Source of the DNA: Trichosphaerium sp. ATCC 40318 | Taxonomy: Eukaryota; Protista; Tubulinea | Reading direction: 5' to 3' | Length of the DNA stretch: 64,000 bases | NCBI GenBank assembly: GCA_038496445.1 | Contig: JALMLS010000315.1 | Span: forward strand, 62,001 to 126,000 | In this document: positions 3,276-8,584 of the stretch, in pieces | Layout: each line of letters opens with the position of its first letter | How positions within the stretch are numbered: the stretch's first letter is position 1 | Program-made: the position numbers and the translations under genes | The notes under the pieces: generated by a model | Database searches by the model: none | The model's input: only the letters and a program-made list of their open reading frames with translations | What the model was told of the DNA's origin: nothing

Positions 3276-4275
3276 ATGACAACAGAAGAAGATAATATGC
3301 TTAAGCTATACTCAGTGGCAACACCAAACGGACAAAAAGTAGGCATAGCACTAAAAGAAATGGGTATTCCATTCATAGGTAACAAACAACACGCCAAAAC
3401 ACATTTTGGTGAAAAAGCGCACCGTTTTAAAAATAACCACTCGGTTGCTTCAACTCCCTCTTACTATTTTTTCAAGGCCATAGAGTTCATGTTGGCCGTG
3501 GAGAGCAGTATAAACCGGAATTCTTAAAAAAGAACCCGAATCACAAAATTCCAGTTATAATCGACCCGAATCTACCAGGTATGTACTTTTCTACGCGCAT
3601 TGTATTGTTTACGGATGTTTTAAACTATTTTGTGTCTAAAACGATAAAAACAGCATTTTTAGGTTCGTAGTTTGTATTCCGTATCCTTGACACTCTTTTA
3701 GATGGTCCAGAAGTAAAATTATACGAGTCTGGAGCGATTATGCTTTATTTAGCTGAAAAATCCGGAAAATTCCTTTCACAAGATCCAGTAAAGCGAAGCG
3801 ACACAATCAAGTGGTTATTTTGGCAAAACTCTCAGATGGGTCCAATATTCGGTGAGTTTCATAATTCCTCTTGGTTATTCACTTACTTTATTTTGCGATT
3901 CCAGCTCAATTTGTTCACTTTGTTACTTTCGCCAAAGAGAGAAAAGAGTACAGTATAGCTCGTTTTGGCAAGGAGACTCACCGGATTCTTGGTGTCTTGG
4001 ATAATCACCTTAAAGGTAGAAGGTATATAGTAGGTGATGAGTACTCTATTGCTGATATGTCGGTCATCCCGTGGTTGAACACAATGTCACTTAAGTATGG
4101 AAAAAAAAAAACCAATACAATCTGTTGTTTGTACTTACGTTGCTTAAGGCTCAAGAGAGTATTACAGAAAGAAACAGACAAAGGATGGGAATATCCAAAC
4201 ATAGACTCGTTCCTTGATCGTGTAATGGAGCGCCCAGAGACTCTTGAAGGCATCAGAGTATTGCCTTTCACTTAA
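3276..4275 (+). CDS. Glutathione S-transferase, Nu/Ure2-like class (YfcG/YghU-like)
   Basis: LYSVATPNGQKV (TPNG), NPNHKIPVIID, YESGAIMLYLAEK, WLFWQNSQMGP, YSIADM across 5 exons. Confidence 0.92.
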
Positions 4276-4472
4276 GTCACAACAGCCTTAAAATTTGTAC
4301 AGTTTGGTAAAAATCTGATGTTAAGTATTTGTGGGGCGTAACCTTGTCTAGTCATAGCCTCAATAAAAGCACCTTTTTATTTGTTTTTGTGAGCTACTGC
4401 TCCTTTGATTTAAAAGGTCATACAGAAAGGGTGAATAACATATGAAGTGACAAGTTATTTAATCAAGTATTG

Positions 4473-7400
4473 CTATTCCATGTTGGCTTGCATGTACCAG
4501 TAATTTTGTGTTGTCACCATGCTATAGAAATTAACAGCGGTGTGTTCTATACGCTTATCATGAATATCTATTATGAGCGCTAAACCCGGTGATTCAACAC
4601 AAAACTTGTGAAAACCTGGCATCTTTGAAAGTAACAATCCACCTCTAAAGCAAGAAAAGTAAGCTCTTGAAGGTTGTACCACCTCCATTAAAACATTCAC
4701 TTTAAAAAATTTTACCTTACGACATCATAAGGATCCTGCAATGAGTTTCTGATATTAAACGAAATGCCAGCCTTAAAAAACAATCAGTTTGAACGCAACA
4801 TTTTATGGATGTGACAGAAAAAAAAAAACGTTTACTTTTTTGAGATCTTGGGTTAGGCTGCTTCTCATTTCGCTGGTGATACCTCTGCCTATATAGATGT
4901 TATACATAGTAGGTTATATCAAAAGGATTTAACTCGTTACCTGAAAGGACTATCGCATTCCACAATTCTTCCTGAATTGATGATGCACATTTTTCTATTG
5001 CAGATTTAACAGCATTGGCATAATCTTCTCCCACTATTATTACAACTGCATCTTTAATAACGGCTCCACAATACACTAAATGGTGTTACTAAAAAAAGTT
5101 CCACAGATTACTTACCTGGTGCTACACACCGGACTTCGTGACCAAGAGATATGACAACACCTACATATTATTAAACATCTTTTTTTTTTTAGTTCAAGGC
5201 CAAAAGCACCATTTGTCAATCCATGATTTAGAAGTATGAGTGTGGCCGCATTAGCTATAGATATACTAGGAATATTACAAGTAATAAATAGGATATTCTT
5301 TATAGCCATTTTGTGTTTCTTCGACCAACCTAAATGAAGAGAGTAAGCATATTTGGTTAGTAACTTTTTCGTGTTTGTTTACCGGTTGGTGGCTCGGCAA
5401 TCAATAATGGATGATGGTTAGGTACTCTTTTCCATTCACAAAACATGCCAGCGATAAATTCTGGTAGTGTAGAGCTTTCAAAAACAAAACGTTAACAAAC
5501 AAGCAAGTTTTGGTTTTGATAAAAAAATCACACCCATCAACAACGTTTCCTTCTTTGGTGGTCCTAATAATAATTATTATTATGACTTTATAATAGGAAC
5601 CTTATTTTTAAAAAGGTGTCCATCTTGCCAGTTTTTTGAGGAAGGTAGAGGAGAGCCGTAAATATTTATCTCAGTTTTTTCCAAAAAAAATAAGAATGAA
5701 TCAGACTTCACGTGCCTGTGTTGAATTTCTTTTGGATGGTTTTGCTCAATATCTTCTCCTATATAGTATCTACTCCATTTTATCCTACGTGTGTGCAAAT
5801 CAAATATACTAGTACCAGTGAATTAGACAAAACATCTTTTCAAAAAAAAACTAGGAAAAGAAGTGCAATAAAAAACTGTACCGTGGCGCTTTTGCTACAA
5901 TTGCTTTTATTTCTTGGAATTGCTCTCTATCAGTTCTAGTTGTGCATAAACCACCTTTGATAGAATAGCTTCCAAGATCAAATACAGCTACAACAAGAAA
6001 AATAAATAACAAGCAACAATACAATTTCTGTACCAAATTCAAGGCCCTTGCTTTTGCTCAGACCTTCAACAATACTGCGTTGCTTGTAGACACTATACCA
6101 ATCTTTCACTGCAGGTTCAATCTAAACCAGTTAACATAAAGACCATTCAAAAGATCCGTGTGAGTACTTTAAGTTGCCCTTTAGCATTTATTGCTCTCAA
6201 ACCACCTACTGCATTATTCCATCTCTTCTTGTATTTATCACTCCATATACTGCCATCCCTTGCAATAATATAGTACACCTTGTACAAGTTTAGCAATAGT
6301 ATAAAATAAAGAAGTATAAAATAGCTAATACCCTTGAAGTAGCAAATACTGAAACAACTTCTTTCGGAGAAAGATATTCAAAGATCATACAATATAATTC
6401 TATGGGCAGAGGTAAACTATCAAGTTGTTCAAAGTCTATCATTTATCATAAGTATGTAAGGCAAGCTATTAAAAATAAGGTAGTAGCAGTATTAGTACCA
6501 GAAACATCAATGGCTTCATGTTGAAGTTTTATTGCTTTTCTGTAAGTTTCAATAAATCCTTTTGTGTCTCCTGCTTCTTCAAGATCATATGCCTATAACT
6601 TGTTTATTCTCGAGTCTCCCAGATATATTTCGTTCATACCTTGTTGTAATAGAAAACTGTCTTCAAATAACCTGGATCTTTTGTAAATCTATTGGACAAG
6701 GACGTGGCAGATTGGTCAACACGCATAAACATAATTTCCGTTCTGAAAATATATTTCACACCCTAAAAAAAAAAGTCACGTTGGTTACCACATAACTAAG
6801 ACGCTTGGGCGTTTTTTGTTTACGAATGTGTACCTTAATAACAGGATCTCCTTGATGTAATACATTGTGATTAAACACAAGTGCAGTACCTGCTTTAGGG
6901 CTAACTTTGACTGCTTCTTCATCACCATCATAAAACACAGTATTTCCCCCTTTTGAAGAATTGTTAACCCAGTTCTCAAATAAAGTACCAACCTTCGAAA
7001 TCATCGTTCAGGTAGACAACAACAGTAAAAACACTGCACTCGTCATGACGAGGAACCCAAGGGCCATCGATATGCTTGTTAAATGACCCACCTTTAGTGT
7101 ATTTTCCAAACTAATAAAAAAAGAAATTAAAACAAAGTCAATTGTAACCATTCTACCTTAAAACACTCGTTCAACCGAGATGGACGCCATAAACCACCAT
7201 TACCGAATCCCATTGGGCGAATTTGAACATCAGATCTGGTTAAAGTGCCCTGTAAAAAGTAAGGAAGTTAAGTTACGAATAAGCAAGAAAAACCAGAAAG
7301 CATAATTTAGTTAAATGACGTGACCACAACGTACTTCCAATCGTTTCCAAAGACTATTTGCTAAACTGTCAGATAGTATAATAAGCTGTTCATTGGATCT

Positions 7401-8478
7401 ATAGTCTTTAGGAAACTGTTTCTTCAAAGATTTCCAACCAATCTTCTCACACTTGTTTATGTAATAATCACACTCAGTCTTAGACATAATACCATCCACA
7501 GTGAAGCACTTTGCACCAGGTACTTTAAGAGATCTACGCTTTACTGTTGCCGGTTGTAAAAGAGATGCTGGAGTTTTTATACGCTTATACTTATTGCCAG
7601 AAGTAACAACCATGTCTTCAACAGTTATGTCCTTACAACACAACTTTTAATGAAATGCGAACAAAAAACCAATCAAAACAAAACTATACCTCTTCTAGTA
7701 CAGGAGGGTTTAAGAGTATTTCTCCAACAGTCTTCAGTTCATCTCCTTGTGGAATCCTATCAAAGAAAAAGGAGTAAATAAACGAACAAGCTCACAAGCA
7801 CACTCTGTTTTAAATCCAACATTAATTTTTGTTTCATCGACTTTTAGTCCTGATAGCTATTTAACGTACTGTTGGAGAGGTAACTGCCAAACGTGATACT
7901 TTCTACTGGATGCATTTGAACCTTCAAAAAATTAAACAACTTCTATTAACAACAACAAGCTTACCAGCTTTACGCAACAAACGCAGTGCATCCCATTGCT
8001 TTGCCAAGCATGCAACTATAATTATATTCAGTACTTTATTCAATATACTGTCACGTGCTTTCAAAAGGAAAAGGCCATAAACTCGAATGTAAATTGATAT
8101 CGGCACCACAACCAATAAGATAATCGATTACTTCTACATTGCCCTAAATTGCAGAAAAAAACTTGTTAGCTGTTTCTCGTTAACAGCGCATCAAATGCTT
8201 TTAAATTGACTCTCACCAGAGCACTTGCTATGTGAAGTAGCGTTGGGCACTGTTTGTCTTGCTTGTAGTCCAGTTTTAGCAAAGTACGGAGTTTGTTGTA
8301 TGCCGCTGGAAGACACGGATATGGCTGTATGTTTTTGGGCGTTACAACGCTGTTTACGCCATCTACATCGAAACTTAATGGTAGAAAACAAAAGAGACAC
8401 CACAGTACGTTTATTAACCCAAACAGTAGCTAAATCCACCGTAAATTTATCTAGCGGCTTTGAAGTAGCACTTCCCAT
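4473..8478 (-). CDS. Multidomain protein: N-myristoylation motif, ankyrin repeats, 2OG-Fe(II) oxygenase (P4H-like), F-box, divergent actin-like domain
   Basis: Phase-consistent exons: MGSATSK; TLLHIASALGNVEVIDYLIGCGADIN; FNKHIDG..VVYLNDDFEGG.T.F..LVFNHNVLHQGDPVIKGVKYIFRTEIMF; LPLPIELYCMIFEYLSPKEVV; AVFDLGSYSIKGG, HPLLIAEP, GVVISLGHEVRCVAPV, EELWNAIVLSG, VRGGLLLS. Confidence 0.85.
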
Positions 8479-8584
8479 TTTAAACGTACGCCGTTACCGT
8501 TGTCGAAAGTAACAGTCTTAAACAGCAACAATAACAGTACAATTAGCAGGCTTTAAGGCCAAGTAGTACGTTTAACTTCTAGGG

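What the first reader, a model, noticed from the sequence alone, without database searches (positions are those of the whole stretch)
4942..5160. Actin fold with subdomain 4 cleanly deleted
Seen within a single exon: VYCGAVIKDAVVIIVG (aligns by eye to actin IYEGYALPHAILRLDLAG) runs directly into EDYANAVKSAIEKC..EELWNAIVLSG (actin GIHETTFNSIMKC..KDLYANTVLSG). About 90 residues, i.e. subdomain 4, are missing. The phosphate-1 loop is kept (DLGSYSIKGG) and phosphate-2 is degenerate (SLGHE vs DSGDG). Inference: a non-polymerising mini-actin that keeps the subdomain 1/3 cleft used by WH2, gelsolin and profilin-type ligands.
Basis: partly seen in the sequence, partly recalled or inferred. Interest (0 to 1): 0.7.

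Follow-up and report, generated by a model that had tools for sequence, protein, structure and literature searches.

The report
F-box protein's actin domain lacking subdomain 4
This amoeba gene really does encode an actin-type domain that has lost one of actin's four lobes; it sits at the tail of a large ubiquitin-ligase adaptor (F-box) protein, and a sponge and a choanoflagellate carry the same stripped-down domain, so it is an old, apparently undescribed protein family and not an error.

Summary
Observation confirmed. Exon 4941-5075 (minus strand) runs from the third beta-strand of actin subdomain 3 straight into the helices that follow subdomain 4 in actin. About 88-91 actin residues (c. 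180/198 to 273/285) have no counterpart.

It is neither an assembly deletion nor a skipped exon. A full-length transcript contig from a slightly different isolate (L001) splices identically, and the flanking introns are only 40 and 52 nt.

The domain is not a free mini-actin. It is the C-terminal module of an 838-aa, 25-exon protein: MG start, ankyrin, 2OG-Fe(II) oxygenase, TPR-like linker, F-box, actin-like domain.

Homologues with the same layout and the same missing subdomain occur in the sponge Ephydatia muelleri (tandem array), the choanoflagellate Choanoeca flexa and an environmental contig. The loss is therefore an old family trait.

Catalytic and adenine-pocket residues are replaced. 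Only 4 of 13 residues of actin's ligand cleft are kept, none across the family.

Best reading: a nucleotide-free pseudo-actin serving as the substrate-binding module of an SCF-type ubiquitin ligase (inferred).

Precedents are plant ARP8/SUSA2 (F-box plus actin) and bacterial AlfA (no IIb). Unchecked notes of this scan report similar F-box/actin genes elsewhere in this genome.

The parts
4357..8557 (-). Whole transcribed gene: 25 exons and 24 introns of 40-152 nt (23 GT..AG, one GC..AG)
   Evidence: Transcript contig L001 aligns collinearly with the window. Run X1's spliced contig gives the same junctions for the 3' half.
4473..8478 (-). Coding sequence for 838 aa, stop codon included. Layout: MGSATSK start, ankyrin, 2OG-Fe(II) oxygenase, TPR-like linker, F-box, subdomain-4-less actin fold.
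   Evidence: The open frame runs through all exons. Pfam on the near-identical P0001 gives Ank, 2OG-FeII_Oxy_3, F-box-like and Actin.
4941..5075 (-). The finding's exon: last strand of the subdomain-3 sheet, a short junction, two helices and the next strand (VYCGAV...IVLSG)
   Evidence: In the AF2 model this stretch has pLDDT 88-96.
5017..5043 (-). Junction residues (VIIVGEDYA) that stand where actin has about 100 profile positions of subdomain 4
   Evidence: HMM nodes 177-276 face query residues 182-190. Coordinates were worked out from the exon phase.
5116..5160 (-). Exon with the degenerate phosphate-2 loop (GVVISLGHEVRCVAP)
5882..5987 (-). Exon with the phosphate-1 loop (AVFDLGSYSIKGG); start of the actin-like domain
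4476..5987 (-). Actin-like domain, about 300 aa in 10 exons: subdomains 1, 2 and 3 plus a roughly 40-aa non-actin C-terminal tail
   Evidence: Pfam Actin E 3.5e-21. PDB actins E about 1e-13. VIA-align Z 21-23 to Arp4, actin and crenactin over 250-260 residues.
6168..6435 (-). F-box (two exons: LPLPIELYCMIFEYLSPKEVVSVFATSRVYYIIARDGSIW)
   Evidence: Pfam F-box-like 28.9 bits against a cut-off of 24.3 in P0001. Homologues score 47-55 bits.
6640..7631 (-). 2OG-Fe(II) oxygenase (prolyl-hydroxylase-like) region, with HxD and downstream His/Arg
   Evidence: Pfam PF13640 E 9e-12. H299 and D301 are invariant in alignment A2. There are weak PDB matches to PiuC and prolyl 4-hydroxylases.
6499..6720 (-). 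Conserved TPR-like linker between oxygenase and F-box (GYLKTVFYYNKAYDLEEAGDTKGFIETYRKAIKLQ)
   Evidence: Conserved across the family. It matches designed TPR proteins.
7965..8362 (-). Ankyrin repeat region (three exons)
   Evidence: Pfam Ank/Ank_3/Ank_2 at residues 49-119. Exon map.

Best explanation
The exon encodes the core of a strongly diverged actin/Arp-type domain from which subdomain 4 (IIb) has been lost. The third strand of the subdomain-3 sheet connects through about 5-9 residues directly to the helices that follow subdomain 4 in actin.

The domain is the C-terminal module of an 838-aa protein that also has an MG (myristoylation-like) start, ankyrin repeats, a probably active 2OG-Fe(II) oxygenase, a TPR-like linker and an F-box. 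The loss is ancestral to a family shared with a sponge and a choanoflagellate.

Most likely mechanism (inferred, not shown): the F-box docks the protein on Skp1 of an SCF ubiquitin ligase. The subdomain-4-less actin fold no longer binds or hydrolyses ATP in the actin manner and serves as the protein-binding (substrate or partner) module. The fused oxygenase may add oxygen-dependent control.
For: Shown:
- Exon continuity and expression in transcript contigs from an isolate that differs by 8 coding substitutions and one codion-length indel (one codon) from the window.
- Membership of the actin family by sequence.
- No counterpart for about 88-100 actin positions.
- AF2 with an actin-family alignment gives pTM 0.76 and pLDDT 86-96 across residues 110-260, junction included.
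- The nearest solved folds are Arp4, actin and crenactin, Z 21-23 over 250-260 residues.
- F-box scores above the Pfam cut-off.
- Homologues P0003 and P0004 (Ephydatia), P0005 (Choanoeca) and P0009 share the oxygenase/linker/F-box/short-actin layout.
- The actin-like domains alone align collinearly across the junction: E 7e-25 to the sponge protein and E 4e-16 to the choanoflagellate protein.
- The sponge genomic block has no room for a hidden subdomain-4 exon.
- Four of the five family members form one clade, support 100/99.
- Key catalytic residues are changed: G15Y, Q137A, D154S, D157H, G158E, H161C. The subdomain-4 half of the adenine pocket is absent.

From the literature:
- Arabidopsis ARP8/SUSA2 is an F-box plus actin-domain protein that binds the Skp1 homologue ASK1. 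Its actin domain is thought to bind the substrate (PMC7562919).
- Dictyostelium JcdI is an F-box protein that is also an O2-dependent dioxygenase (PMC9485057).
Against: - No binding, ligase or nucleotide experiment exists for any member.
- The AF2 model was built with an alignment of ordinary actins and Arps, so its actin-like shape is partly built in. A single-sequence run failed (pLDDT 34).
- Phosphate-1 residues D11, G13, S14 and K18 are conserved across four of the five members. Phosphate-2 is conserved in an altered form (D/S-x-G-R/H-E/D). Some ligand in the cleft therefore cannot be excluded.
- AlfA shows that an actin without IIb can still bind ATP and polymerise.
- The clade rests on very long branches, and P0009 is unplaced.
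Confidence: 0.65

Rival explanations
1. One reading: a mini-actin that keeps the hydrophobic cleft between subdomains 1 and 3 and so binds WH2, gelsolin or profilin-type actin ligands. As part of an F-box protein, it might deliver them for ubiquitination.
For: Subdomains 1 and 3 are predicted to be present and are packed as in actin. G146, T148, G168 and L346 are kept in this protein.
Against: - Nine of the 13 cleft residues are changed: Y143L, A144N, Y/F169A, I341R, I345L (conservative), L349M (conservative), T351G, and M355 and F375 unmatched. None is conserved across the family.
- Profilin/gelsolin contact residues at 284-290 and 354-375 are changed or absent.
- The C-terminal 40 residues are unrelated to actin and have pLDDT below 50.
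Confidence: 0.1
2. A polymerising, ATP-binding simplified actin like bacterial AlfA, here tethered to an F-box.
For: AlfA lacks IIb, replaced by a five-residue loop, yet binds ATP and forms filaments. The phosphate-1 motif DLGS..K is conserved in the family.
Against: - The catalytic Gln137, His161 and Asp154 are lost. Gly15 and Gly158 are replaced by bulky or acidic residues across the family. The adenosine motif is degenerate.
- The D-loop region is replaced by a conserved basic motif.
- Structurally the model is nearer to Arp4 and actin (Z 22) than to AlfA (Z 14.7).
Confidence: 0.05
3. An artefact or a decaying gene: an assembly deletion, a missed exon, or a pseudogene remnant of an actin.
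For: None was found. The exons are very short and the sequence is far from actin (about 23% identity).
Against: - Genome and transcript contigs from a slightly different isolate agree.
- The 838-codon frame is intact.
- The flanking introns are 40 and 52 nt, too short to hide 90 codons.
- The same short domain occurs in sponge genomic DNA and in a choanoflagellate transcriptome.
Confidence: 0.02
4. The short actin fold is not a substrate receptor. It would instead be a partner or regulator of the fused oxygenase, for example by holding actin or an Arp as the hydroxylation target, or by acting as an intramolecular pseudo-substrate.
For: - The oxygenase, linker, F-box and short actin are inherited together in amoeba, choanoflagellate and sponge.
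- The oxygenase metal-binding residues are invariant.
- JcdI's dioxygenase function did not need its F-box.
Against: - Nothing direct.
- P0006 and P0007 keep the oxygenase and F-box without a recognisable actin part.
- Unchecked notes of this scan list F-box/actin genes with a different oxygenase or none. The two modules are therefore separable.
Confidence: 0.15

Closest known systems
Arabidopsis ARP8 / SUSA2 (F-box plus actin-related domain)
   Same: An F-box lies N-terminal to a diverged actin-family domain. ARP8 binds the Skp1 homologue ASK1, and its actin domain is proposed to bind the SCF substrate (PMC7562919).
   Different: - ARP8 is reported as plant-only and has no oxygenase, ankyrin or TPR-like parts.
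- Nothing in the text read says its actin domain lacks subdomain 4.
- Common descent with the present family could not be tested, because no ARP8 sequence was on hand.
Bacterial plasmid-segregation actin AlfA and its IIb-less relatives
   Same: An actin fold in which subdomain IIb (actin subdomain 4) is replaced by a loop of a few residues (10.1101/186080, 10.1101/190744).
   Different: - AlfA keeps the ATP-binding motifs, binds nucleotide and polymerises.
- It is bacterial or phage-borne and stands alone.
- The present domain is clearly of the eukaryotic actin/Arp type by sequence, has lost catalytic residues and is fused to an F-box.
- The model matches AlfA less well (Z 14.7) than Arp4 or actin (Z about 22).
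Conventional actin and the classical Arps (Arp1-Arp11)
   Same: - Pfam Actin match.
- Recognisable motifs DLGS..K, YIGED, LLIAEPP, NIPS, GVV.
- Subdomains 1, 2 and 3.
   Different: - Subdomain 4 is absent.
- Identity is about 23%.
- It falls outside the actin, Arp1, Arp2 and Arp3 groups, on a long branch.
- The Arps read about here differ from actin by insertions (Arp8, abstract; Alp1), not by loss of a whole subdomain.
Dictyostelium JcdI (F-box plus JmjC dioxygenase)
   Same: A protist F-box protein that also carries an O2-dependent non-haem dioxygenase and binds Skp1 (PMC9485057).
   Different: It has a JmjC domain rather than a prolyl-hydroxylase-like oxygenase, and no actin-like domain.

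Membership tests
Actin / actin-related protein family (Pfam PF00022) | Significant sequence match to the family profile | tested here: met
   75.7 bits against a cut-off of 27, E 3.5e-21. PDB actins at E about 1e-13. Profile-profile Prob 99.3%.
Actin / actin-related protein family (Pfam PF00022) | Four-subdomain architecture (1, 2, 3, 4) | tested here: not met
   Subdomain 4 has no counterpart: HMM nodes 177-276 face 9 residues, and MAFFT puts the gap at actin 198-285.
Actin / actin-related protein family (Pfam PF00022) | Nucleotide-binding and hydrolysis residues (phosphate-1, phosphate-2, adenosine motifs, Q137, H161) | tested here: not met
   D11, G13, S14 and K18 are kept. G15Y, Q137A, D154S, D157H, G158E and H161C are changed. 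K213 and E214 are absent. Residues 302-306 are changed. Actual binding was not assayed.
F-box proteins (SCF substrate receptors) | F-box motif above the curated threshold | tested here: met
   PF12937 scores 28.9 bits against 24.3 in P0001 and 47-55 bits in the sponge homologues.
F-box proteins (SCF substrate receptors) | Binding to Skp1 and assembly into an SCF ligase | not testable with these tools
   Needs co-expression or co-immunoprecipitation.
Plant ARP8/SUSA2 class | F-box N-terminal to an actin-family domain | tested here: met
Plant ARP8/SUSA2 class | Common descent (grouping with plant ARP8 in a tree) | not tested
The published statement is that the combination is plant-only.
AlfA-type IIb-less bacterial actins | Subdomain IIb replaced by a short loop | tested here: met
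   the AlfA description is.
AlfA-type IIb-less bacterial actins | Closest similarity to AlfA and retained ATP motifs | tested here: not met
   VIA Z is 14.7 to AlfA against 21-23 to Arp4, actin and crenactin. The top 60 PDB sequence hits are all eukaryotic actins. The ATP motifs are degenerate.
2OG-Fe(II) oxygenases (PF13640), for the N-terminal half of the same protein | Profile match and HxD...H metal triad with a 2OG-binding Arg/Lys | tested here: met
   PF13640 scores 46.2 bits against 27. H299 and D301 are invariant, and the LH.G...Y[IV].RT motif is conserved in all complete members. Activity was not assayed.

The most novel reading that the evidence does not exclude
An ancient class of F-box proteins, predating animals and shared by amoebae, choanoflagellates and sponges, uses a nucleotide-free actin fold without subdomain 4 as its target-binding module. 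Through the fused 2OG oxygenase it would couple oxygen or metabolite sensing to ubiquitination of actin-cytoskeleton components. This would be a eukaryotic, independently evolved counterpart of the IIb-less bacterial actins, and a non-plant counterpart of ARP8.
Probability: 0.2. Interest if true: 0.8.

Novelty: new variant of a known kind. Interest (0 to 1): 0.62.

Why it matters
Every eukaryotic actin and Arp described in the papers I could search differs from actin by insertions or substitutions. None lacks a whole subdomain. The only described actin without IIb is bacterial AlfA.

The F-box plus actin combination has been reported as confined to plants. This gene shows an expressed, conserved eukaryotic actin-family domain reduced to three subdomains and wired into the ubiquitin system in amoeba, choanoflagellate and sponge.

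It offers a natural minimal actin core for structural work. It is also a new candidate substrate-receptor type for SCF ligases, and it gives an annotation for a set of sponge 'hypothetical proteins' that Pfam's threshold misses.

Tried and rejected
- **Pfam and PDB searches with single exons** gave almost nothing, because the exons are too short. My first PDB call used the wrong frame.
- **Exhaustive HMMER search with the 45-aa exon** found only the protein's own near-identical transcript product, plus one spurious ankyrin-repeat match, P0002.
- **Word-index searches with the actin-like domain** found no relatives, either alone or as a region of the whole protein. A JGI metagenome scan also found none. 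Relatives appeared only when the whole protein was used, through its oxygenase and F-box words.
- **Single-sequence AF2** failed, pLDDT 34.
- **hmmalign in glocal mode** mis-handled the second half, so I replaced it with local and MAFFT mappings.
- **Canonical actin in the window:** none found.
- **Literature phrases for 'lacking subdomain 4'** gave no hit. The Alp1 preprint concerns an insertion, not a loss.
- **McKinney 2002 on ARP8** is not held.
- **The ESM Atlas shape search** returned only ordinary actin clusters.
- **Model coordinates** are not readable in scripts, so I could not measure distances at the junction or inspect the cleft.
- **Rejected:** assembly deletion, hidden exon, pseudogene, and a non-actin ASKHA origin. 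Hsp70, MreB, ParM and sugar kinases all score lower than actin and the Arps.

Full report
**What is in the sequence**

The finding lies in a minus-strand, intron-rich eukaryotic gene. Notes of this scan describe the genome as an amoeba-like protist.

Laying public contigs on 4250-6650 showed that a 1559-nt contig of run X1 is spliced at 13 junctions with GT..AG ends on the minus strand. It crosses 4940-5076 without interruption. From these junctions I built a 15-exon model of the 3' half with one open frame.

The ATG at 6442 that a simple ORF list suggests as a start is intronic. The frame continues upstream.

**Recovering the full protein**

An exhaustive HMMER search with the 45-aa exon found one true hit, P0001 (837 aa, 96% identical over the exon). 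Its source is a 2710-nt JGI transcript contig, L001.

L001 aligns collinearly with the window in 25 exons, from 8557 down to 4357. The window's own frame is intact and gives 838 aa.

L001 differs from the window by five synonymous and three non-synonymous changes and one extra codon. The transcript therefore comes from a slightly different isolate and is independent of the genome assembly. X1 carries the same variants as L001 at the places seen, so I count X1 and L001 as one source.

The introns flanking the exon are 40 and 52 nt. An assembly deletion or a hidden exon can be set aside.

**Is subdomain 4 really missing?**

- Pfam places the Actin profile on P0001 538-711 (profile 7-170 of 410), with a second stretch further on; 75.7 bits against a cut-off of 27.
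- phmmer against solved structures returns only actins among the best 60 (E about 1e-13). There are two collinear pieces, actin 92-191 and actin 273-357.
- I fetched 130 actin-family loci with two degenerate DNA patterns and extracted 47 full-length actin, Arp1, Arp2, Arp3 and viral actin ORFs.
- An HMM built from them matches the domain at nodes 6-176 and 277-361. That leaves 100 nodes facing nine residues.
- MAFFT with representatives puts the gap at actin 198-285.
- The helix EDYA[N/D]AVKSAIEK can be aligned either with actin's 182-194 helix or with its 274-284 helix. That is why the two methods place the edges differently. The size of the loss, 88-91 residues, is the same.
- Global profile-profile alignment of the family against the actin family gives Prob 99.3% and E 1.7e-19, with the subdomain-4 columns unmatched.
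- The roughly 40 residues after the last actin-like helix are too few to be a displaced subdomain 4.

**Structure**

A single-sequence prediction failed, pLDDT 34. With an alignment of 44 actins and Arps (A1), AF2 gave pLDDT 72.7 and pTM 0.76. Residues 110-260 score 86-96, including the junction.

The predicted order there is strand, strand, short strand, five-to-nine-residue link, helix 189-198, helix 202-209, strand 212-215. This is the bare beta-beta-beta-alpha-beta core of the fold.

Foldseek and VIA-align put Arp4, actin, crenactin, Arp8 and Arp3 on top (Z 21-23, 250-260 residues aligned). MreB scores 17, Hsp70 15 and AlfA 14.7.

This model leans on the actin alignment. It shows compatibility and is not independent proof.

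**Context**

The protein is a fusion: MGSATSK start, ankyrin repeats, 2OG-Fe(II) oxygenase, a TPR-like linker, F-box, then the actin-like domain. A separate first-reader note on this window had proposed this layout. I confirm it from the transcript.

**Relatives**

Searches with the actin-like part alone found nothing. The whole protein found:
- Ephydatia muelleri proteins P0003, P0004 and P0008;
- Choanoeca flexa P0005;
- Cochliopodium minus P0006;
- two environmental proteins, P0007 and P0009.

P0003, P0004, P0005 and P0009 share the order oxygenase, linker, F-box, a KDWY..YKQR motif, then an actin-like domain beginning xxDLGS. All lack subdomain 4.

Their actin hits are below Pfam's threshold (E 3e-5 to 3e-3), which explains why they are annotated as hypothetical. 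P0001 is the member that links them to actin.

The actin-like domains alone are significantly similar and collinear through the junction:
- 25% identity and E 7e-25 to the sponge protein;
- 23% identity and E 4e-16 to the choanoflagellate protein, which has a roughly 30-residue insert at the junction.

In the sponge the genes form a tandem array on one chromosome-scale record. The genomic block encoding residues 454-640 has only about 57 spare bases.

In a maximum-likelihood tree, P0001, P0005, P0003 and P0004 form one clade (100/99) outside actin, Arp1, Arp2 and Arp3. The branches are very long, however, and P0009 is unplaced.

Unchecked notes of this scan report four more F-box/degenerate-actin genes elsewhere in this genome, some with a different oxygenase. 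I could not reach that DNA.

**Function**

Mapped on standard actin numbering:
- D11, G13, S14 and K18 are kept in four of five members.
- G15 is an aromatic residue.
- Q137 is Ala or Ser.
- D157 is His or Arg.
- G158 is Glu or Asp.
- H161 is lost.
- D154 is Ser in this protein.
- The adenine-pocket residues of subdomain 4 are absent, and those of 302-306 are changed.

I infer that the cleft does not bind or hydrolyse ATP as actin does.

Of 13 residues of actin's target-binding cleft, four are kept here and none is kept family-wide. Profilin and gelsolin contacts are mostly changed or missing, and the C-terminal tail is unrelated.

The most conserved family-specific feature is a basic motif, D-x-H-x-R-R-x-x-x-x-R-Y, where actin has its D-loop. 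I suggest it as the binding surface. This is speculation.

The domain sits C-terminal to an F-box, where F-box proteins carry their substrate-binding module. By that position, and by analogy with ARP8/SUSA2, the most likely role is target binding in an SCF ligase.

JcdI of Dictyostelium is a precedent for an F-box protein that is also an oxygen-dependent dioxygenase.

**Comparison and novelty**

AlfA is the described actin without IIb. It still binds ATP and polymerises, so loss of the subdomain does not by itself prove that the protein cannot polymerise.

The F-box/actin combination is stated to be plant-only. I found no paper describing a eukaryotic actin-family domain without subdomain 4. 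The library searched is incomplete, though.

I rate it a new variant of a known kind.

**Limits**

- No ARP8 sequence was available for a tree.
- Model coordinates were not readable.

Noticed in passing
window 5564-5715 (minus strand): The longest intron of the gene (152 nt) appears to be GC..AG, not GT..AG. The junction is seen in contigs of two runs (X1 and X4).
   Followed up: partly
window 3276-4275 (plus strand): A convergent neighbouring gene with glutathione-S-transferase-like peptides (MLKLYSVATPNGQKVGIALKEMGIPF...). Its end lies about 80 nt from the 3' end of the F-box/actin transcript.
   Followed up: no
P0001 residues about 567-583; window exon 5716-5808: A basic motif, D-x-H-x-RR-x-x-x-x-RY, replaces actin's D-loop region. 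It is the best-conserved family-specific feature in amoeba, sponge and choanoflagellate members.
   Followed up: partly
L132 (Ephydatia muelleri CM110744.1, 4.40-4.42 Mb) and cluster members P0014-P0021: The sponge carries many paralogues of this oxygenase/F-box/short-actin gene in a tandem array. All are annotated as hypothetical proteins.
   Followed up: partly
P0006 (Cochliopodium minus), P0007 (ENA contig): These relatives keep the oxygenase, linker and F-box but have no recognisable actin part. P0007 has a WWE domain in front. They may be truncated models or true variants.
   Followed up: no
P0010-P0013 (Myxococcota): The nearest bacterial relatives of the oxygenase domain are fused to adenylate-kinase and phosphotransferase domains.
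   Followed up: no
window 8478 (start codon) and the N-termini of P0003, P0004 and P0008: The amoeba protein and three sponge homologues start with MG followed by small residues and Ser (MGSATSK, MGNISSRS). This looks like an N-myristoylation signal and suggests membrane anchoring.
   Followed up: no
other pieces of the same genome (notes s1-390485, s1-390618, s1-372637, s1-397465): Unchecked notes of this scan list further F-box plus degenerate or truncated actin genes in this genome, one with an AlkB-type oxygenase. This suggests a lineage-specific expansion.
   Followed up: no
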